A stretch of DNA of 64,000 bases from Epithemia pelagica (Eukaryota; Protista; Bacillariophyta). The notes beneath the pieces were generated by a model. It did not search any database. It was not told the origin of the DNA and saw only the letters and a program-made list of their open reading frames with translations. Below, in pieces: positions 23,569 through 30,654 of this stretch. The translations under genes and the position numbers were made by a program. Location of the stretch: positions 1,426,001 to 1,490,000 of the forward strand of contig OX337242.1 of the NCBI GenBank assembly GCA_946965045.2, given 5' to 3'. Position 1 is the stretch's first letter; each line of letters opens with the position of its first letter.

Positions 23569-23592
23569 GTTGGCAGCAGGGTCTGGAAGTCA
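23569..23592 (+). repeat. Left TSD (GTTGGCAG) plus left TIR of the hAT element
   Basis: Read directly from the sequence. Confidence 0.95.
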
Positions 23593-23599
23593 TTTTATG

Positions 23600-23990
23600 T
23601 GCCATCTAAACTTGAATGTAGATTGATTATTCACTTTTCCAATCAGTTTAGAATTCAATTAAGAATTAACGATTCACTTCACGACATATACACAATTGAA
23701 TTAATCTTGAAAGTGTACTAATTTACGGATAGTAAATGAACTTAATTACCAAAGTCAATTATGTTTACAATCAATAAATTCACTTAACTTTACTATTCCC
23801 CTATTTCATACCCTTTGAATTGAATTCAATCCCCAATTCCCTTTTCGAACCAATTGGAATTAAATTCCAATCCCAATTCCCTTTTCGAACGAATTTGAAT
23901 TGAATGAATCATTCCCAATTCACACCACCATTCAGAACAAATGAATTACACATTCACAAATTCCATTCATTCTCTGAATTATGACTCACA
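23600..23990. repeat. Left subterminal AT-rich array of AATTC/CCCAATTC/TTGAAT motifs
   Basis: Dense short motifs, including a near-perfect direct repeat AATCCC(C)AATTCCCTTTTCGAAC at 23828-23850 and 23869-23890. Confidence 0.8.
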
Positions 23991-24070
23991 GTCACACACT
24001 GTACACCTTATCCTTTCTCCACCATTATAGTCGTACAACATACAACTAAGAAGATGTTAGGTACGCCTGT

Positions 24071-26128
24071 ATGTTTCAGTATCGACGAACAGCAACACAC
24101 TCCTTTGTGGAGCTTGTCCATATTCCTGATGTCTTCCATCTTACACCATTGTACATCGTATACTCTCAGTCGTCACATTTTATCGTACCTATTGTCTCAA
24201 TGAGCTCCCAACAATACCCAAGTAGTTGTCGCCCAACAATATCTTTGTCAAGCATATGCTCTCCTGTTGTTTCTCTCTCTCAAGCTCCACACTCATTTTT
24301 CAAATTCATTCGAGAAGAACTCCCAGACTTGTCAACCATGTCTTTTGATTTGAGAATGGAAGCAATACAAGACACCATTCTTGTTTGGCTCATTCGAGAA
24401 GATGCTTCAATTCGCTACACTTCGTGCTCTCTTGATATTCTGACAAGCCATCCATGTCAGATCAAGCCATCTCTTTCTATGGACCAATCCATCTACCTTA
24501 TCTCATTACTGGTTCACCATGGTTTATATCCCTCGCAAGAAATTCCCACCAACTTCCTGTTGAGCAACCCCAAGTTCAAAATGAGCCGGCCTAAAGATGA
24601 TTTCCCAGTATTGCACCTCCACTGCAGCTGTCAACCTATGTATGAAGTCGGCACCGAAGACATTGGATACAAAGAAGCAATTGAATATGTATTGTTGAAT
24701 GGGCAAATTGATACTCAAGAAGACCTCAATGTTCAATCGATGGAAGACTATTTTCTGGAGTGGATGATACATCGTGATGCACTCATTTCTGTTTCTACAT
24801 CACACAACAGAACAATTCACCCAGTCTCTATCGATCCTCTCTTACACTGCATTGCTACATCAATGTTGTCCCAAATATCCAACAAGATTATATCCCAAGG
24901 AGATCCAACCATTCTGTCTACTCCAGTAACTACTCCTCCAGATTCGATTGTACCTGCTGATTCCTTCCCCATTGATGGACCATCTCCACCCACATCACCA
25001 TCTCAATCGACAAAACCATCTCCAGTCAATGCAAAACACAACTCATCATCACAAGAAATCGCTGTTGCAAAGCCAAAGCCTGACACTCCGACAAAGCGAT
25101 CTTCTGTTGCCAAACACAGCAACCCACCATATTCTCAGATTATGACTCGCAAACAATATGCCACCGCCGCCAACCTCCTCATTAAAGCATCCAGAGCAAG
25201 GCGACAAATCTGCTACAAAGATAAGAACAATATTCGACACATGCCTGGTCAACCTGTTCGTTTGAAACCCAATGATCTCTCCTTGTACAACAAAACAAAA
25301 AGTTGCCCCCCCACAATATCTGAACAGACTTTGAGAAAGAGGGTTGTTGACTTGCAGTATTTGAAAAAGCTTCATGAACATTTCCTTTCCAAAGGTCTGG
25401 AAGCTCCAAGAGACAGTTGGGAAGACTGGATTAACGACCATCTCTCACCAGAATCCGACCGAGCCTTCATGTGCTTGGTTGTGATTCTTATGAGTTCCAG
25501 CACAAGCGACAAACAATTAGCTAAAGTGGTACCCACTTTGTTCCAATGTGGGTTTGTCTCTAGTCGGGCAACCAGTGACATTGCACTCAACTATGGGATG
25601 GACGCTGTATGTTCCCTATTGGCAGAGACTGGTCTATATTATAAGAATGCTGAGGCTATCGTCAGCGCAGCAGACTACTTCATCCAACGGCATTCTGGAA
25701 TTATACCAGAAACCATTACGGTGCAAGAACTAACGTGTCTGCATGGGGTTGGGTACAAGACTGCCACAATTGTCTTGGCATTTGCATTTCAAAGAATTGA
25801 CGGAATTCCAACTGATGTGCATGTACATCGCTGCTCTCGAGCCCTGGGATGGATCCCCAAATCATGCAACGACCCAGACATGTGCTCGGCTTTGTTGGAG
25901 TCTTGGATTCCAAAGGAGTACTGGGAATGGGTCAACCCAATGTTTGGAGCGCTCGGGCAACTAATACAAGACCCAAAGACACGTCACCAATGTTCAGAAA
26001 TCCAGATGGATTTCACAGTCCGTCGTCTTGACAAAGACCATAAGAAGAAACTCTTAGACAGCAAAGAGATCTACAACCTACACAACAATTTCCTTCATTT
26101 GTATCGGTCCTATTGCAGTTCCTCATGA
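24071..26128 (+). CDS. Transposon passenger: unknown N-terminal region plus an endonuclease III/NTHL1-like HhH-GPD glycosylase domain without Fe-S cluster
   Basis: Uninterrupted 685-codon ORF with ILMSSSTSD, ETGLYYKNA, HhH ELTCLHGVGYKTA (catalytic Lys), GIPTDVHVHR (catalytic Asp) and LESWIPKEYWEWVN..GALGQ. The start could be the downstream ATG (MSSQQY). Confidence 0.9.
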   Translation: MFQYRRTATHSFVELVHIPDVFHLTPLYIVYSQSSHFIVPIVSMSSQQYPSSCRPTISLSSICSPVVSLSQAPHSFFKFIREELPDLSTMSFDLRMEAIQDTILVWLIREDASIRYTSCSLDILTSHPCQIKPSLSMDQSIYLISLLVHHGLYPSQEIPTNFLLSNPKFKMSRPKDDFPVLHLHCSCQPMYEVGTEDIGYKEAIEYVLLNGQIDTQEDLNVQSMEDYFLEWMIHRDALISVSTSHNRTIHPVSIDPLLHCIATSMLSQISNKIISQGDPTILSTPVTTPPDSIVPADSFPIDGPSPPTSPSQSTKPSPVNAKHNSSSQEIAVAKPKPDTPTKRSSVAKHSNPPYSQIMTRKQYATAANLLIKASRARRQICYKDKNNIRHMPGQPVRLKPNDLSLYNKTKSCPPTISEQTLRKRVVDLQYLKKLHEHFLSKGLEAPRDSWEDWINDHLSPESDRAFMCLVVILMSSSTSDKQLAKVVPTLFQCGFVSSRATSDIALNYGMDAVCSLLAETGLYYKNAEAIVSAADYFIQRHSGIIPETITVQELTCLHGVGYKTATIVLAFAFQRIDGIPTDVHVHRCSRALGWIPKSCNDPDMCSALLESWIPKEYWEWVNPMFGALGQLIQDPKTRHQCSEIQMDFTVRRLDKDHKKKLLDSKEIYNLHNNFLHLYRSYCSSS

Positions 26129-26271
26129 GTCAATTTCTTATTAGTTACTATCTGTTTTTCCTTGTTTGTTCTTTTTCTTTTTGGTTCTCGCATGTATCTT
26201 GTATGTAGTCGTTCTCGTTTGTAGTTGTACGTAGTCTTTTTTGTTTTCTGTTCCGTCATGTTCTGTATTTA

Positions 26272-29200
26272 TCAGTGGTCTTCATTACTGTTATTGGTGC
26301 GGCGTCGCGGACTTGTCCATCGTTGTTGTTGTCGTTGTTCTTCTTGCTGCTCTCCGATGTGTTCTGCAGGAGGTGGTTTCTTTGCTCTCGACGATTTGGA
26401 CTTGGACTTTGTTCGAGATGCCGATTCTTGAATGGATTGTTGGCGCACTCTTTTGGAAGATGCACTCGTTTGAGTTGTTGCCTTCCTTTTTGATAAGGTG
26501 GTGGATCTTTGGGTTGTTGGTGTGGTACTGTGTGTAGCAGGAGTTGTCGTCAAAACGATTCCTGTCACACTTCCTTGAACACTTGCACTGGTACTGTTGC
26601 CTTGATCTGTCGTTGATGTAGTGGGATTCATTGTTCGATTTGAAGATGCAGAAATACTAGAACCAGCCATCAAGTTCATTTGTTGTAGTTTGACCGCCTC
26701 AATGATGCAAGCATCACTATCTGACTGAAATGGGTCCTTGTCTTTCCCAAGACGACCCATGCATTCCATTTGTTCCTTGTCCCCTTCGTCCACTATATCA
26801 ATGAGCACTACGTCATCGAATTTTTGTACCAAATCCAGATCAGAATCACTGCATTTGTATTCGTATTCTGAACCAACAATCCCATCGTTCCCTTCGTCTT
26901 CATCAAGTTCAATTTGTTCCCGGGCCTTGTGGTGCTTCTGCATATCTTTTACACCCTTCAAAATGGTTTTCAGACGTTTCATATGACCTTGAGTGGTCCC
27001 TTCAGCAATGGAATCCCATACCGAGACTTCATCGGTTCCCTGCTCATGTTCCTCAGCAGCTTCATTTTGTTCTTCATTATCTTCGCCACTGCCGTTGTCA
27101 GTTCCATTGTTGTCTTCATCGTCATCGTCATCAACCACGGAGATTACTTCCGCCTCTACTTCGGCCTGGGCCTCGTCTCTCTCTTGGCTTGAAGCTGTTC
27201 TTTGTTGGTTCTGCAGTTGCTCCTGTTGACTTATCTGGCGCTGTGTGGCATTACTCCTAGCTTGCTCCTCGGCCTTACCCCTGGTTTGCGCTTCGTCCTC
27301 GTTCTCTGTGGTGTGTTGAGATTTCTTTTTCAGGGTCATTTCATTAACCTCAATCTCTCCACGAACCTTTCTTGTTACCATCTCCATGGTGCGAATCTCG
27401 AAATGTTTCTTGAGCTCGTTCCTCATCAATCTATTGCTATCAAACCATGAGGAGAAAGAAAATATCCTCTCTTGGAAAGCGTTTGTAGAAGGCTTCGAGA
27501 GCCACACGAGGGCACTTGGGAAAATCATCCTGAAATTACTCTTGTTCGCCTGCCACCACTGTAAGACATCAAAATACTTGCCCACACTGTTGAAATCTTG
27601 ATCATTACATGCCTGTCTGAACTTTTTCTTTTCTTGAGGCGTCCATTTTGGTGACTTTTCAGAAAAAAGAACGGTGGGATACTCCCTAATCAACGATTCC
27701 CAGGAATTGTGGATAATGCGCTGACAGTAATCCTTGAACCCCTTGAATTCGTTGTTACATTGTTCTCTAAAGCTCTTCTTCTGCTCGTCCAACGTGTTAA
27801 GATTGTTGTTTTCCACGGACGTGCTGTCTTCATTCTCTCCATGATTCCGAAAAATATTGAACACATCGTCATCATCCGAGTCGTCGTGTTCTATATCTAC
27901 AACCTCCTCATTGGCTGTCCCGGCCATTGGGGCTGGTCCATTCATTGCCAACCTTTCAGGAGTGGAAAACTTTGCTACCATGTCATCAACAAATTGTTTT
28001 TGGATTCTGGAGACGTCGTTGTCGTCGTAGATCTTGATTTTTTTCAGGATGTACGGTGCCATGTAGCAGAGAAACGGATGACCGCAGATAGCATTCTCTG
28101 CATGGACGTCGTCACCATTCATCATGTAGGTGCGAAATTCACGTAGAAGCCGGTTAATAAGCATCCGTGAGGCGGGCAGTAAATCTGCAAACTTGATATT
28201 TTTCCTTTTGGAACGGAGTTTCTCTATGGTTAACCTGGCATCCCAACGTTGGAACTCTGTGTCTAGTTCTGTGGGGTTCACAAGCAGAACAGAGACACCG
28301 TTGTCTTTGTGGTATTTGATTCCATGATGGCAACCAAAGATTTCCAGCAAAGAGCCTGCAGCAGAGGAAGGATCGTCTGCTTGTAAGGACGTGGCGCATT
28401 TCTTGAGTGGAGAAAGAATTCCTTCGAATTCTGCTATGGCCTGCCAGTCCTCCTTGGACAGATAATTCTCGCGGAAGTCTTTGTCTACAGAAAACTAAAC
28501 TCTTGTGAATTGTAGTCATCCATGACGTACTTATCACGTAGGAGATCATGGAATGTGAGAGCGCATCCGAGAACCCTGGTTGTGTTCGGCGTACGGATCT
28601 CCACTACAACTTGGTGATTTTTTGTTGCGTAGTCCCTCAATGCCTGGAATCTCTTCTTTCTCTTCGTCATCAGGATTGAAGCTAACTTCAAGGCTTTCTT
28701 GTATGTGTCCACAAATCCGGGAAACTGGTCGATTACCCTTCCCCCCCTTCGTCGTACAGCCAAGCCGGTGGCGTGCTTAAGAATTAATTCCGCACGATGC
28801 ATATCGCACTTTCCTCCAGTCTGATTTCCCACAATGTACTTTCCGGCAAGGACTGCCGAATTTGTATTGTCGTTTACGGAAGAGGAGAGGTCAGACTGCG
28901 TAATTCCAACGGTTGTGAGGATTTTAAGTGTGTGGGTCGCCACTTGGGCTGCTGTGTGGCCGTCTGTTTCGCAGAGACCTACGGGAATCTTGTAAAACAC
29001 GCAATTCCTGGGGTCAATCAGCATTAGGCACAATCCAAGGATGTCTTTTTGATGGCCTTGCCATATGTCATGACAAATTGTGGCGAAGGGAATTGTTTTG
29101 CCACAAATTAGCTTGTAGGCCATCCGGACATTCAGGCATAGGGAGGAAACAGTTTGGAGAAAATTGTTGTAGGAATCAAGTCGCTTGCGTATGATGGCTT

Positions 29201-30042
29201 TGTTGCTCATGACACAATCTTTTGTCGACAGCTTCTGGGCGTTAAGAATGGTGAATTCCAGCATAGCTCGGAAGGACTTCTTTTCCACTGTTGAAGTGGG
29301 TAAGCCGTTGTCGTTGACAAACTGGTAGATTGATTGTTGAAACTTGATTCTAGCCTCGTCCTTTGACATCATGGAACCCTTGTAGGATGTCATAAGTGGT
29401 TGGTTGCTTTCTACATTGGACTTCGGTCCATTTTTTTTTTCGTTCCATTTCTTCTTTCACATGCGGATGGAAAGAATCCATATGTTGGCTAACATTCGAA
29501 GAGGAGCCACTTTTCTTCTGCTTGCTGACACCACAGAGGATGGTAGAGGCGAAAAAAGACTTGTCTGGGTCTTCAAAGCAAATCGGGCACACCACAAGAC
29601 GCTTACATATGGATCCCCATGACTTTTTGGGTGCTGTTTGGTCCTCTTTTGATGCTTGGTTGAGTACAGCAAAGCATCGAGAAATACCTTCCATTTTGCT
29701 AACTTCTTTGGTGTCAAGTCTTGCTTGTAATTCTGTTAACTGGCAAAAGTCCAAGTGTCTCACTGTTCCCCAGTAGGTATTCAGATTCTTGAAATGCTCT
29801 CTCGGTGGACTTTTGAGGAAGGGGACATAGTCTTTCTCTTTCTTGATTTCTTGATGAATTGCTTCGGTTCGTTGGGCTTGGGTAGGGTGTTGCCTATTCT
29901 GTTGATTGTTGTTCCCTTGGGGGGCTAAAGCAGCGGGTGGGTTCTTGTCTTGCTGTGCAGGTGGAGGGTCTGGGTTCTCTGCTTGTGTGGGATGAGCCGG
30001 GGGTGTCTCCTCTTGTTCTGCCATCGTCGGTTGTGTTGACAT
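26272..30042 (-). pseudogene. hAT transposase split over three frames by two single-base frameshifts
   Basis: BED finger (CPIC...SNVSQHMDSFH), first Asp ICHDIW, second Asp VNDNTN, CxxH (CDMH), TTR motif, and dimerisation domain VLQWWQ...FP.A..WLSKPSTNAFQERIFS containing the catalytic Glu. Shifts at the A10 run (29431-29440) and near the T4 run (28491-28494). Confidence 0.9.
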
Positions 30043-30289
30043 GATGGTAGATCCAGACAGGGTGGACAAGGATGCTGGGCTTTGAAGATGATTAAGACGC
30101 ACAATCAAGCCAGACAACATGTGTTGCAAGCTGCAACAGACAATGAACTGTTGAAGGATTGGTGGATGGACGGTAGAGGTGAGAGGTAAGAGAGTGTCAC
30201 AAGTCACAAAGATGAGGCGGTTGAAGGTAGGGTCACTGTGTGATATTGTATAGAAACGTAATTCACATGACACATTGGGGGGAGAATGG

Positions 30290-30630
30290 TAATTCCATCT
30301 GTGCGTAGGAGAAAATTGATTGGATTCTCAAATTCTTATAGTGAGTAAGAAGGAATTGGATTGGATTGGGAATTGATATCGTCTGATGAAGTGAATTGAA
30401 TGGAATTGGAAAGTGTCTATTTTAGTGAATTGGGAATTGAATTAGGGAATTGACATTCCCCGTCTGAGATGATGAGACTTGAATCGGAATAGTGAATCCA
30501 AGAAAAAATCGGTATTGAGTTGAGTGGATTGTGAAATTCAATGAAAGTAAAGGAGGAGGATTTCAATTGAATGGCTTAATTCAAGCTAAATTTAAGTTAC
30601 ATTCCCTAAAGTCATTAAAGTCCCACTTTT
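30290..30630. repeat. Right subterminal AT-rich array of GAATT/GGGAATTG/TTGAAT motifs (inverted relative to the left array)
   Basis: Repeated GGAATTG, GTGAATTG and GGGAATTG, the reverse complements of the left-end motifs. Confidence 0.8.
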
Positions 30631-30654
30631 TGAATTCCAGACCCTGGTTGGCAG
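30631..30654 (-). repeat. Right TIR plus right TSD (GTTGGCAG) of the hAT element
   Basis: TGAATTCCAGACCCTG followed directly by GTTGGCAG. Confidence 0.95.

What the first reader, a model, noticed from the sequence alone, without database searches (positions are those of the whole stretch)
23577..30646. Complete hAT transposon carrying an endonuclease III-like DNA glycosylase passenger gene
Seen: 15/16-bp matching TIRs, a perfect 8-bp TSD (the size diagnostic of hAT) and subterminal arrays. Exactly two genes lie inside: a hAT transposase (minus strand) and an intact, intronless 685-codon ORF with an NTHL1/Nth-type HhH-GPD domain (plus strand). Known: hAT elements normally encode only a transposase. 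Chromatin- or DNA-modifying passengers are known in other superfamilies (VANC in Mutator-like VANDAL, TET/JBP with KDZ transposons, Harbinger MYB proteins). I am not aware of a hAT-plus-glycosylase element but could not search. Inference: a two-gene mobile system in which a base-excision enzyme serves the element, for example by anti-silencing or by processing excision and integration sites.
Basis: partly seen in the sequence, partly recalled or inferred. Interest (0 to 1): 0.92.

Follow-up and report, generated by a model that had tools for sequence, protein, structure and literature searches.

The report
hAT transposons carrying a DNA glycosylase
This is one copy of a large, old family of cut-and-paste (hAT) transposons that always carry, next to the transposase, their own endonuclease III-type DNA base-excision enzyme, a kind of transposon cargo I could not find described and which probably helps the element against DNA-based silencing.

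Summary
The element at 23577-30646 has 15/16 matching TIRs, a perfect 8-bp TSD (GTTGGCAG), subterminal GAATTG-type repeats and two convergent intronless genes.

- **This copy is not autonomous.** Its transposase is broken by a 5-bp tandem duplication and a T-run length change. Sibling copies keep one 1281-aa ORF.
- **It is a family, not a one-off capture.** Nine further full insertions were fetched from the same assembly. They fall into five subfamilies, and each has its own 8-bp TSD and the same gene order.
- **The two genes have stayed together.** Glycosylases are only 32-48% identical between subfamilies, and their tree matches the transposase tree.
- **The enzyme looks functional.** The catalytic Lys563 and Asp582 are invariant in 22 divergent members. 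Between two subfamilies, synonymous sites are saturated but the catalytic domain is conserved.
- **What the protein is.** It is of the Nth/NTHL1 lineage, not DEMETER/ROS1. It lacks the Fe-S cluster and has a confidently predicted N-terminal double domain with no structural match.

Function and expression are untested. My best guess is anti-silencing by excision of modified cytosine. Elevated CpG transitions among copies suggest the elements are methylated.

Other first-stage notes in this scan flagged the same family on other DNA of this genome; those I saw carried no follow-up. I found no publication on it.

The parts
23569..23576 (.). Left copy of the 8-bp target site duplication, GTTGGCAG
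   Evidence: Identical to 30647-30654. Sibling insertions have different 8-bp TSDs.
23577..23592 (+). Left terminal inverted repeat, CAGGGTCTGGAAGTCA
   Evidence: Matches the right TIR at 15/16 positions. The same first 12 bases end four other copies of this subfamily.
23593..24070 (.). Left subterminal region: AT-rich (33% GC), with GAATTG/CAATTC-type short repeats. Presumed transposase-binding sites and ORF1 promoter.
   Evidence: Hexamer enrichment of 12-16 observed against about 0.6 expected. The binding and promoter roles are inferred.
24071..26128 (+). ORF1, 685 codons, intronless: Nth/NTHL1-lineage HhH-GPD glycosylase-like protein with a new N-terminal domain
   Evidence: Pfam HhH-GPD E 5e-7. 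Best solved relative by sequence is human NTHL1, E 1.4e-17. Fold match to 7rdt has TM 0.72. The ORF is open in all five subfamily-1 copies. Conservation starts near residue 52, so the 596-aa gene model that starts at Met90 is probably too short.
24224..24910 (+). ORF1 residues 52-280: internally duplicated alpha/beta N-terminal domain of unknown fold. Each repeat carries one invariant Trp.
   Evidence: AlphaFold pLDDT 91.5 and pTM 0.81. No significant match in PDB, AFDB clusters or VIA-align wide. W106 and W231 are invariant in 17 members, listed as W55 and W180 of the part aligned.
25328..25990 (+). ORF1 residues about 420-640: endonuclease III-type HhH-GPD catalytic domain. It includes the Lys563 codon (25757-25759) and the Asp582 codon (25814-25816). 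There is no Fe-S cluster cysteine motif.
   Evidence: Lys and Asp align with the GVGPK Lys and VDTHV Asp of NTHL1. Both are invariant in 22 family members, and no conserved C-terminal cysteines appear. Codons checked.
26129..26271 (.). 143-bp spacer between the 3' ends of the two convergent genes
   Evidence: ORF coordinates. It is the most variable part among copies, with 4.9% of sites variable.
26275..28494 (-). Transposase C-terminal part, equivalent to residues 542-1281 of the intact protein. It holds the hAT dimerisation domain, followed by a C-terminal extension of about 390 aa whose distal part is acidic and low-complexity.
   Evidence: tblastn piece in frame -2, 97.7% identical to the intact sibling. 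Pfam Dimer_Tnp_hAT. The only PDB sequence hits are Hermes transposase.
28492..28496 (.). 5-bp tandem duplication (AAACT) that frameshifts the transposase of this copy
   Evidence: Absent from four sibling copies.
28494..29438 (-). Transposase central part (residues 229-543 of the intact protein), out of frame with both neighbouring parts in this copy
   Evidence: tblastn piece in frame -3, 98.4% identical.
29431..29440 (.). T-run (a Lys run in the coding sense) whose length differs from siblings by 2 bp, giving the second frameshift. A homopolymer assembly error cannot be excluded for this one.
29431..30120 (-). Transposase N-terminal part (residues 1-230), with start codon at 30120-30118 and a BED-like Cys/His pattern
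   Evidence: tblastn piece in frame -2. Start codon checked. The CPICF...HMDSFH pattern was read in the translation; Pfam returned no zinc-finger family.
30121..30630 (.). Right subterminal region with GGAATTG/TGAATTG repeats, all on the + strand. Presumed transposase promoter and binding sites.
   Evidence: The function is inferred.
30631..30646 (-). Right terminal inverted repeat (reverse complement CAGGGTCTGGAATTCA)
30647..30654 (.). Right copy of the target site duplication, GTTGGCAG

Best explanation
Shown: the window holds one insertion of a multi-copy, diversified hAT transposon family. Its canonical unit is 6.8-7.1 kb and consists of:
- TIRs beginning CAGGGT (CAGAGT at the left end of one subfamily) and an 8-bp TSD;
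- subterminal short repeats;
- two convergent intronless genes. ORF1 is an Nth/NTHL1-lineage HhH-GPD enzyme of about 600-690 aa with a new N-terminal double domain. ORF2 is a hAT transposase of about 1170-1345 aa.

ORF1 has been part of the element since before the subfamilies split. It was acquired once, and the two genes have diverged together. It is kept under purifying selection with its catalytic Lys and Asp intact. It is therefore most likely an active bifunctional glycosylase/AP lyase that works without the usual Fe-S cluster.

The window copy keeps ORF1 open but has a frameshifted transposase. It could move only with transposase supplied by sibling copies.

Inferred mechanism: ORF1 is made from the left subterminal promoter. 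Its N-terminal domain brings it to element DNA or chromatin. There it excises a modified base, most plausibly 5-methylcytosine or an oxidised or deaminated derivative. Host base-excision repair then restores unmodified cytosine, which counteracts methylation-based silencing of the family.

My odds for each step:
- two-gene family architecture and co-inheritance: about 0.95;
- catalytically active glycosylase/lyase: about 0.7;
- anti-silencing by excision of modified cytosine: about 0.35-0.4.
For: **Recurrent insertions.**
- Nine other complete insertions in the same assembly have the same gene order, matching TIRs and nine different perfect 8-bp TSDs.
- Subfamily-1 copies are 98.7-99.6% identical.
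- Read depth in DNA runs is about 1000-1090 inside the element against 64.5 at the unique junction. That suggests about 16 copies of this subfamily. The protein cluster has 19 members.

**A distinct family.** The exhaustive profile search finds 36 representatives (50%-identity clusters) at E <= 1e-30. There is then a gap down to ordinary Nth-like proteins. In a domain tree the family forms one side of a branch against 104 other Nth-like representatives.

**Co-divergence.**
- Pairwise identities of glycosylase and transposase correlate at r = 0.91.
- Maximum-likelihood trees of the two proteins for ten subfamilies show no conflicting resolved branch.

**Selection.**
- Between subfamilies 1 and 2, pS is 0.77-0.80 (saturated) while pN is 0.245 in the catalytic domain.
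- K563 and D582 are invariant in 22 members that share about 30% identity.

**Enzyme identity.**
- Pfam HhH-GPD.
- NTHL1 at E 1.4e-17, with the Lys and Asp aligned.
- Fold match to NTHL1 and EndoIII at TM 0.72.
- The top 30 Swiss-Prot fold matches are all endonuclease III homologues or a putative glycosylase.

**Context for silencing.**
- Among copies, C>T/G>A changes are 5.2 times more frequent at CpG than elsewhere (24 of 434 sites against 28 of 2637).
- CpG observed/expected is 0.64-0.80 in the elements against 0.86-0.95 in the flanks.
- This is the usual footprint of cytosine methylation.

**Precedent.** DNA transposons, including hAT, carry TET/JBP dioxygenases that are proposed to remove silencing marks (PMC12730594).
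Against: - No expression evidence. No RNA run holds the sequence, and the runs that do hold it are DNA.
- No methylation data and no biochemistry.
- The enzyme is closest to Nth/NTHL1, which excise oxidised pyrimidines. It is not close to the DEMETER/ROS1 5mC glycosylases, none of which appears among the top fold matches.
- The Fe-S cluster, which canonical Nth and DME/ROS1 both have, is absent. The Gln of the LSSQT motif of NTHL1 (the first-stage note's 'wedge Gln') is Ser here. Activity and substrate are therefore uncertain.
- CpG hypermutation persists in the copies. If the enzyme demethylates, it does not keep the copies unmethylated all the time.
- Within subfamily 1, dN/dS is about 1. 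This is expected for neutral decay after insertion, so it gives no recent-selection signal.
- Five of the ten gene pairs in the tree comparison were paired only because they share a contig length.
Confidence: 0.45

Rival explanations
1. Transposition helper. ORF1's glycosylase/AP-lyase activity acts in the transposition cycle itself. It might nick or process DNA at the donor site or at the 8-bp gaps of the integration site. It might also channel repair of the excision break towards homologous repair, so that the donor copy is restored and copy number rises.
For: - ORF1 is strictly co-inherited with the transposase.
- The catalytic residues are conserved.
- The Lys of an Nth-type enzyme confers strand-cleaving lyase activity (established knowledge of Nth/NTHL1; alignment).
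- The unknown N-terminal domain could be a transposase- or end-binding module (searches show only that its fold is unmatched).
Against: - hAT transposition as known from Hermes and Ac needs only the transposase plus host end-joining. It creates no base lesion for a glycosylase to recognise (established knowledge).
- No other hAT is known to need such a factor.
- No interaction evidence exists.
Confidence: 0.2
2. Mutation shield. ORF1 is a mismatch glycosylase of the MBD4/Mig/TDG kind. It removes T or U produced by deamination of 5mC or C in methylated element DNA, and so slows the CpG decay that would destroy the element's genes.
For: - The copies show methylation-type CpG hypermutation, so the selective pressure exists.
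- HhH-GPD enzymes that remove T from T:G exist, for example the thermostable thymine-DNA glycosylase 1kea among the fold matches.
Against: - CpG transitions are still 5.2-fold elevated, and CpG is depleted in the elements.
- T:G glycosylases of this superfamily are monofunctional and lack the catalytic Lys, which is invariant here (established knowledge).
- A diffusible repair enzyme would help the whole genome, not the element specifically.
Confidence: 0.12
3. Non-catalytic accessory protein. ORF1 serves as a DNA-binding or recruiting partner of the transposase, as the Myb-like protein does in PIF/Harbinger elements. The glycosylase fold is used only as a DNA-binding scaffold.
For: - Loss of the Fe-S cluster and change of the LSSQT-motif ('wedge') Gln to Ser.
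- Gain of a large new N-terminal domain and a conserved basic linker motif.
Against: The catalytic Lys and Asp and the surrounding HhH and Asp-loop motifs are invariant across members that share only about 30% identity. This is hard to explain without catalysis.
Confidence: 0.08
4. Host-beneficial cargo. The glycosylase gives the host extra oxidative-damage repair, so insertions are tolerated or favoured. It has no role for the element.
For: The closest characterised relatives are oxidised-pyrimidine repair enzymes.
Against: - Dozens of copies in many diverged subfamilies are far more than a repair function needs.
- Individual copies decay neutrally after insertion: dN/dS is about 1 within subfamily 1, and many cluster members are truncated.
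- Selection therefore acts at the level of the transposing lineage, not on host loci.
Confidence: 0.05
5. One-off or artefactual association. Either a Pack-type capture of a host NTH1 fragment in this copy alone, or a host glycosylase gene that merely lies beside a hAT insertion.
For: None found.
Against: - TIRs and TSDs enclose both genes at ten independent loci.
- The family is separated from ordinary Nth-like proteins by a wide score gap.
- The glycosylase and transposase trees agree.
Confidence: 0.01

Closest known systems
TET/JBP-carrying DNA transposons of fungi (Kyakuja-Dileera-Zisupton, hAT7, Harbinger, IS3EU, EnSpm, Plavaka, Helitron; PMC12730594)
   Same: These are cut-and-paste DNA transposons, including a hAT lineage, that carry a second gene for an enzyme acting on modified DNA bases. 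That enzyme is proposed to remove silencing marks from the element. Many families occur in one genome.
   Different: - The cargo here is a base-excision glycosylase/lyase of the HhH-GPD superfamily, not a 2OG-Fe(II) dioxygenase.
- The host is a plastid-bearing alga, apparently a diatom, and not a fungus.
- TSDs are 8 bp, not the 7 bp of hAT7.
- In fungi the TET/JBP gene moved repeatedly between transposon superfamilies. Here the cargo and the transposase trees agree, which indicates one acquisition and co-divergence.
Endonuclease III / NTH1 / NTHL1 (bifunctional HhH-GPD glycosylases)
   Same: - Same fold (TM 0.72 to 7rdt and 1orn).
- Best sequence relatives (E 1.4e-17).
- The HhH Lys and the Asp of the catalytic dyad are conserved.
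   Different: - No [4Fe-4S] cluster cysteines.
- The Gln of NTHL1's LSSQT motif (the first-stage note's 'wedge Gln') is Ser.
- About 420 extra N-terminal residues: a new duplicated domain, a disordered linker and a conserved basic motif.
- Conserved PRDxW..W motif (PRDSWEDW in this copy) ahead of the core.
- Encoded inside a transposon in dozens of copies.
DEMETER/ROS1 5-methylcytosine glycosylases of plants
   Same: They are HhH-GPD bifunctional glycosylases with a Lys/Asp dyad, and their biological role is to remove DNA methylation. This is the activity I think most likely for ORF1.
   Different: Not a member. DME/ROS1 have an Fe-S cluster, a split glycosylase domain and conserved flanking domains. 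None of these is present here. No DME/ROS1 protein appears among the top sequence or fold matches.
VANC anti-silencing proteins of VANDAL (Mutator-like) transposons in Arabidopsis (PMC5735166, PMC10398659)
   Same: A DNA transposon family encodes, besides its transposase, a protein that acts on copies of its own family to undo methylation-based silencing. Subfamilies diversify together with their non-coding target repeats.
   Different: VANC is not an enzyme of base excision and is unrelated in sequence. It belongs to a different superfamily (Mutator, not hAT). Sequence-specific targeting of ORF1 is only a hypothesis here.
Canonical hAT elements (Ac, Tam3, Hermes, hobo)
   Same: - 8-bp TSD.
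- Short TIRs starting CAG. By my recollection, not tested here, Ac's TIR starts CAGGGATGAAA.
- Subterminal short repeats.
- Transposase with the hAT C-terminal dimerisation domain; Hermes is the only solved relative.
   Different: - A conserved second gene.
- A very long transposase, with about 390 residues beyond the dimerisation domain.
- Both genes lack introns.

Membership tests
hAT superfamily of DNA transposons | 8-bp target site duplication | tested here: met
   Perfect 8-bp TSDs at ten independent insertions, all different.
hAT superfamily of DNA transposons | Short terminal inverted repeats (10-25 bp) plus subterminal repeats | tested here: met
   16-bp TIR matching at 15/16. TIRs begin CAGGGT in the subfamilies examined, or CAGAGT at the left end of the L009/L010 subfamily. 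Subterminal hexamers are enriched about 20-fold.
hAT superfamily of DNA transposons | Transposase with the hAT C-terminal dimerisation domain (PF05699) | tested here: met
   PF05699 scores: E 2.1e-4 at 21.4 bits, equal to the cut-off, for the intact subfamily-1 protein; 21.0 bits, just under the cut-off, for this copy's ORF; E 1.7e-5 at 24.9 bits in subfamily 2. Precomputed PF05699 is recorded on most relatives. Hermes transposase is the only PDB sequence hit and aligns over the ...SERxFS motif. The scores are marginal but consistent.
hAT superfamily of DNA transposons | RNase H-like DDE catalytic core and N-terminal BED zinc finger | tested here: inconclusive
   A CxxC...HxxxxH pattern is visible in the N-terminal part, but Pfam gave no zinc-finger or RNase H hit. 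The Hermes alignment covers only parts of the core. No structure was predicted for the transposase.
Endonuclease III / Nth family (HhH-GPD superfamily) | HhH-GPD fold | tested here: met
   Pfam PF00730 above the gathering score. Foldseek match to NTHL1 and EndoIII with TM 0.72 and probability 1.0. The top Swiss-Prot matches are all EndoIII homologues.
Endonuclease III / Nth family (HhH-GPD superfamily) | Catalytic Lys in the HhH motif and catalytic Asp about 20 residues later (bifunctional glycosylase/lyase) | tested here: met
   K563 (GVGYK) and D582 (PTDVHV) align with the Lys and Asp of NTHL1. Both are invariant in 22 members. Codons verified.
Endonuclease III / Nth family (HhH-GPD superfamily) | C-terminal [4Fe-4S] cluster, Cys-X6-Cys-X2-Cys-X5-Cys | tested here: not met
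   No conserved cysteines after the catalytic core in any of the 22 aligned members. I therefore file the protein as Nth-lineage and Nth-like, not as a canonical endonuclease III.
Endonuclease III / Nth family (HhH-GPD superfamily) | Excision of oxidised pyrimidines, with AP-lyase activity | not testable with these tools
   This needs enzyme assays.
DEMETER/ROS1 5mC glycosylases | Fe-S cluster, discontinuous glycosylase domain and conserved flanking domains | tested here: not met
   No Fe-S cysteines. No DME/ROS1 protein among the PDB or Swiss-Prot sequence and fold matches.
Pack-type gene capture (a passenger fragment copied from a host gene) | Passenger nearly identical to a host gene, fragmentary, present in one element lineage and evolving neutrally | tested here: not met
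   ORF1 is a full-length ORF in all subfamilies. The nearest non-family proteins score at most about 107 bits. It co-diverges with the transposase, and its catalytic domain is conserved while synonymous sites are saturated.

The most novel reading that the evidence does not exclude
A transposon lineage has built its own active DNA-demethylation or de-modification enzyme from an Nth-type repair glycosylase. The new N-terminal double domain targets the enzyme to the family's own subterminal repeats or chromatin. The Fe-S-free catalytic domain excises 5mC or an oxidised derivative; the latter might be produced by the TET/JBP-carrying transposons that another unchecked note reports in this genome. 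On this reading, base-excision demethylation arose independently of plant DEMETER/ROS1, as a weapon of transposons against host methylation in diatoms.
Probability: 0.3. Interest if true: 0.92.

Novelty: new variant of a known kind. Interest (0 to 1): 0.78.

Why it matters
Transposons that carry enzymes acting on DNA or chromatin marks are rare. The known cases are TET/JBP in fungal elements, VANC in VANDAL and SET domains in some Harbingers. They are among the clearest windows on the arms race between mobile DNA and epigenetic silencing.

This would add a new enzyme class to that list: a base-excision glycosylase/lyase. Four things make it a good case.

- It sits in a superfamily (hAT) normally thought to encode only a transposase.
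- It occurs in an algal group where DNA methylation is concentrated on transposons (my recollection of published diatom methylomes, not checked here). No demethylase of that group came up in my literature searches, which were not aimed at that question.
- The system is easy to work with: two intronless genes, many natural variants that diverged together, and clear catalytic residues to mutate.
- It offers an Fe-S-free Nth-type enzyme and an N-terminal domain of unknown fold for structural and biochemical study.

If the substrate proves to be 5mC or a derivative, the enzyme could also be a compact demethylation tool.

Tried and rejected
**Expression.** The look-up of sequencing runs returned no RNA run holding the element. 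The three holders were DNA runs, with contigs up to 509 kb and many different flanks at the TIR. A metatranscriptome (X5) gave nothing at 95% likeness. Expression is therefore untested, not absent.

**Spread to other organisms.**
- The JGI metagenome scan gave only three loci with about 30% identity in the core, which are ordinary Nth-like genes.
- Short contigs from a Logan run (L011, 2 kb) and an ENA metagenome (L012, 3 kb) carry family members. They are too short to show a transposase or TIRs. tblastn with the transposases found nothing significant.
- An ENA contig of 8,690 bp seems to hold both a family glycosylase (P0208) and a family transposase (P0231), judged by equal contig length only.

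**Fold of the N-terminal domain.** Foldseek against PDB (best E 0.23), AFDB clusters (best E 0.023, TM 0.17) and VIA-align wide (best Z 6.0, within the noise level) gave nothing. So did the ESM Atlas feature search (best score 0.47). Weak local matches to DUF6824 proteins are leads only.

**Organism.** I could not confirm 'diatom' myself. A flanking gene is a chloroplast-type GcpE/IspG, so the host is a plastid-bearing eukaryote. Other notes of the scan call it a diatom (unchecked).

**Recent selection.** dN/dS within subfamily 1 is about 1, and the counts of shared against singleton changes are too small to be decisive.

**Insertion into a host gene.** Joining the flanks gives no long ORF across the empty site, so the insertion is probably intergenic.

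**Literature.** Four full-text searches found no paper on a hAT or other transposon encoding an HhH-GPD glycosylase. Repbase Reports are not in the library, so an earlier description there cannot be excluded.

Full report
**1. The observation**

- The left end at 23577 reads CAGGGTCTGGAAGTCA. The right end at 30646 reads CAGGGTCTGGAATTCA in reverse complement. They match at 15 of 16 positions.
- Both ends are flanked by GTTGGCAG, at 23569-23576 and 30647-30654.
- The 494 bp and 373 bp of DNA beyond the long ORFs at the two ends (23577-24070 and 30274-30646) are AT-rich. They are packed with GAATTG/TGAATT-type hexamers: 12-16 occurrences each, against 0.5-0.7 expected from the rest of the window. 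The hexamers lie in opposite orientation at the two ends.
- Inside are two convergent genes. ORF1 (24071-26128, +, 685 codons) carries a Pfam HhH-GPD hit above the gathering score. The minus strand carries a hAT transposase.

**2. This copy has a broken transposase**

Sibling copies encode the transposase as a single intronless ORF of 1281 aa. In the window, tblastn splits it into three pieces in frames -2, -3 and -2. There are two causes:

- a 5-bp tandem duplication (AAACT) at 28492;
- a 2-bp length difference in a T-run near 29431-29440.

The duplication is not a homopolymer artefact. The T-run difference could be one. Either way this copy cannot make full-length transposase.

ORF1 is open in this copy and in the four sibling copies I fetched. 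A further 7-bp indel lies just upstream of the transposase start codon. The insertion does not interrupt any long host ORF.

**3. It is a family, not a single capture**

ORF1 belongs to a 90%-identity cluster of 19 sequences. A second cluster of 8 sequences is 46-48% identical. All are from one ENA assembly, ERZ21939226, which also holds the window's contig.

| Group | Loci fetched | TIR start | TSDs |
|---|---|---|---|
| Subfamily 1 | L002, L003, L004, L007 | CAGGGTCTGGAA | CTAACGCC, CTCTTGAT, TTCCAAGT, CTTCGAAG |
| Subfamily 2 | L001, L006 | CAGGGTTTGGAA | CTTGGTGG, GTTGGCGG |
| Three more distant subfamilies | L008, L009/L010, L013 | CAGGGT... or CAGAGT... | GTAAGGAC, TTGTTCAC, ATTCAGGC, ATCGACAC |

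- The four subfamily-1 siblings are 98.7-99.6% identical to the window copy and to each other.
- A third subfamily-2 copy (L005) lacks a recognisable right end within the locus. A Copia-type RVT_2 gene lies just beyond its shortened transposase ORF.
- In the three distant subfamilies, glycosylase identity to subfamily 1 is about 35%. All three show the same gene order, with glycosylase (+) followed by a convergent hAT transposase (-).
- In DNA runs, contig depth inside the element is about 1000-1090, against 64.5 for the unique junction contig. Several different flanks join at the TIR. This suggests about 16 copies of subfamily 1.

**4. Size and spread of the family**

An exhaustive profile search of 1.84 billion representative proteins found 36 clusters (at 50% identity) with E <= 1e-30, scoring 126-570 bits. 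Ordinary Nth-like proteins scored at most about 107 bits.

- Most representatives come from the same assembly.
- A few come from short contigs of an ENA metagenome, Logan assemblies and JGI/IMG. JGI/IMG's automatic annotation names them 'endonuclease III'.
- No member seen had an NCBI or UniRef source.
- The transposase has about 30 clusters at 90% identity, again mostly from this assembly. One of them has 205 members.
- An 8,690-bp ENA contig appears to hold both a family transposase and a family glycosylase.
- Whether the gene pair exists in other organisms is therefore likely but not shown. The short contigs L011 and L012 do not reach a transposase.

**5. One acquisition, then co-divergence**

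- For the five subfamilies with confirmed adjacency, pairwise identity of the glycosylases (0.32-0.48) tracks that of the transposases (0.32-0.54), with r = 0.91.
- I added five more pairs, matched only by shared contig. The two maximum-likelihood trees then have the same resolved groups: (sf1,sf2) with sf10; (sf4,sf5) with sf8; and the same deep split. In the glycosylase tree sf3 and sf9 also pair; the transposase tree leaves them unresolved beside that clade. No resolved branch conflicts.
- In a tree of catalytic domains, the transposon-borne proteins form one side of a branch against 104 other Nth-like representatives. Support for that branch is moderate (SH-aLRT 68).

**6. Selection**

- Within subfamily 1, dN/dS is about 1, as expected for neutral decay of inserted copies.
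- Within subfamily 2 it is about 0.3, on few changes.
- Between the two subfamilies, synonymous sites are saturated (pS 0.77-0.80). pN is 0.245 in the catalytic domain and about 0.41 in the N-terminal domain.
- Across 22 members with about 30% identity, the invariant positions include K563 and D582, the ILMSSSTSD motif and a conserved PRDxW..W motif (PRDSWEDW in this copy). One Trp is invariant in each N-terminal repeat.

**7. What ORF1 is**

- By sequence, the best solved relatives are human NTHL1 (E 1.4e-17) and bacterial endonuclease III. The Lys of GVGxK and the Asp of xDxHV are aligned.
- The AlphaFold model (pLDDT 76.6) has three parts: a confident N-terminal domain (residues 52-279), a disordered linker (280-355) and a confident C-terminal domain.
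- The C-terminal domain superposes on NTHL1 and EndoIII with TM 0.72.
- The top 30 Swiss-Prot fold matches are endonuclease III homologues, plus one putative Arabidopsis glycosylase. There is no DEMETER or ROS1 among them.
- The four Fe-S cluster cysteines are absent from the whole family.
- The N-terminal domain folded on its own is very confident (pLDDT 91.5) and consists of two similar alpha/beta units. It has no significant match in PDB, AFDB clusters, a wide VIA-align search or the ESM Atlas.

**8. The transposase**

- Pfam finds only the hAT dimerisation domain, at or near the threshold.
- The only PDB sequence hits are Hermes, over the C-terminal motif that ends in ...QERIFS.
- Together with the 8-bp TSD, the CAG-type TIRs and the subterminal repeats, this places the element in hAT.
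- The DDE core and the BED finger were not formally shown.

**9. Hints about function**

- Among the five subfamily-1 copies, C>T and G>A changes hit CpG sites 5.2 times more often than other C/G sites (24 of 434 against 28 of 2637).
- CpG observed/expected is 0.64-0.80 in the elements, against 0.86-0.95 in their flanks.
- This is the usual footprint of cytosine methylation, so the host very probably methylates this family.

An element-encoded enzyme that removes modified cytosine would then have an obvious benefit. Fungal transposons carrying TET/JBP dioxygenases, hAT among them, are a published precedent for such cargo (PMC12730594). An unchecked note in this scan reports a TET/JBP-carrying transposon in this same genome.

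Against this reading:

- The enzyme is of the Nth type rather than the DME/ROS1 type.
- CpG decay continues.
- There is no expression, methylation or enzymatic evidence.

**10. Verdict**

It is a diversified lineage in which a glycosylase gene has travelled with the hAT transposase for a long time, under selection for catalysis. The proposed service to the element remains inference. I put anti-silencing by base excision first (about 0.35-0.4), a role in transposition or repair second (about 0.2), and the other readings lower.

I found no publication describing it. Other first-stage notes of this scan flagged the same family on other DNA of this genome; those I saw carried no follow-up.

Noticed in passing
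window 23577-30646 and loci L002, L003, L004, L007 (element copies): Among the five subfamily-1 copies, C>T/G>A changes are 5.2 times more frequent at CpG than at other C/G sites. CpG observed/expected is 0.64-0.80 in elements of all five subfamilies, against 0.86-0.95 in the flanks. This footprint suggests that the host methylates these transposons.
   Followed up: partly
window 24224-24910 (ORF1 residues 52-280): The N-terminal domain of ORF1 is an internal duplication of an alpha/beta unit. AlphaFold is very confident (pLDDT 91.5), yet there is no structural match in PDB, AFDB clusters or a wide VIA-align search. Only weak local matches to DUF6824 proteins appeared.
   Followed up: partly
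window 26275-27450 (transposase residues about 890-1281): The transposase continues for about 390 residues beyond the hAT dimerisation domain. After about 35 conserved residues the tail turns largely acidic, Ser/Thr-rich and basic, but it contains patches that are conserved between subfamilies 1 and 2. Its function is unknown.
   Followed up: no
L005 12567-17869: A subfamily-2 copy has a shortened transposase ORF (863 aa) and no recognisable right TIR within the locus. A Copia-type (RVT_2) retrotransposon gene lies just beyond it, so it may be a nested insertion or a truncation.
   Followed up: no
protein P0232 (same assembly, contig of 1,762,785 bp): One transposase cluster of this lineage has 205 member sequences (905 aa, 40% identical to subfamily 1). 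It is by far the most abundant subfamily. Whether it carries the glycosylase is unknown.
   Followed up: no
proteins P0208 and P0231 (ENA contig of 8,690 bp): A family glycosylase and a family transposase both report a longest contig of 8,690 bp in ENA. This is probably a complete element on a much smaller ENA contig, possibly from another sample.
   Followed up: no
protein P0249 (same 1,592,775-bp contig as the window): A further family glycosylase (594 aa, 35% identical to the subfamily-1 protein P0013, which is about 98% identical to the window's ORF1) lies elsewhere on the window's own contig.
   Followed up: no
window 24071-24338: The public gene model for ORF1 (596 aa) starts at Met90. 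Family conservation and the first predicted beta-hairpin begin near residue 52-56. The true start is therefore more likely Met1 or Met44.
   Followed up: partly
same genome, other DNA (note s1-242206): Another first-stage note reports an 18-kb Plavaka/CACTA-like transposon carrying a TET/JBP-like dioxygenase in this genome. If that is true, two different transposon lineages here carry enzymes acting on modified bases (unchecked).
   Followed up: no
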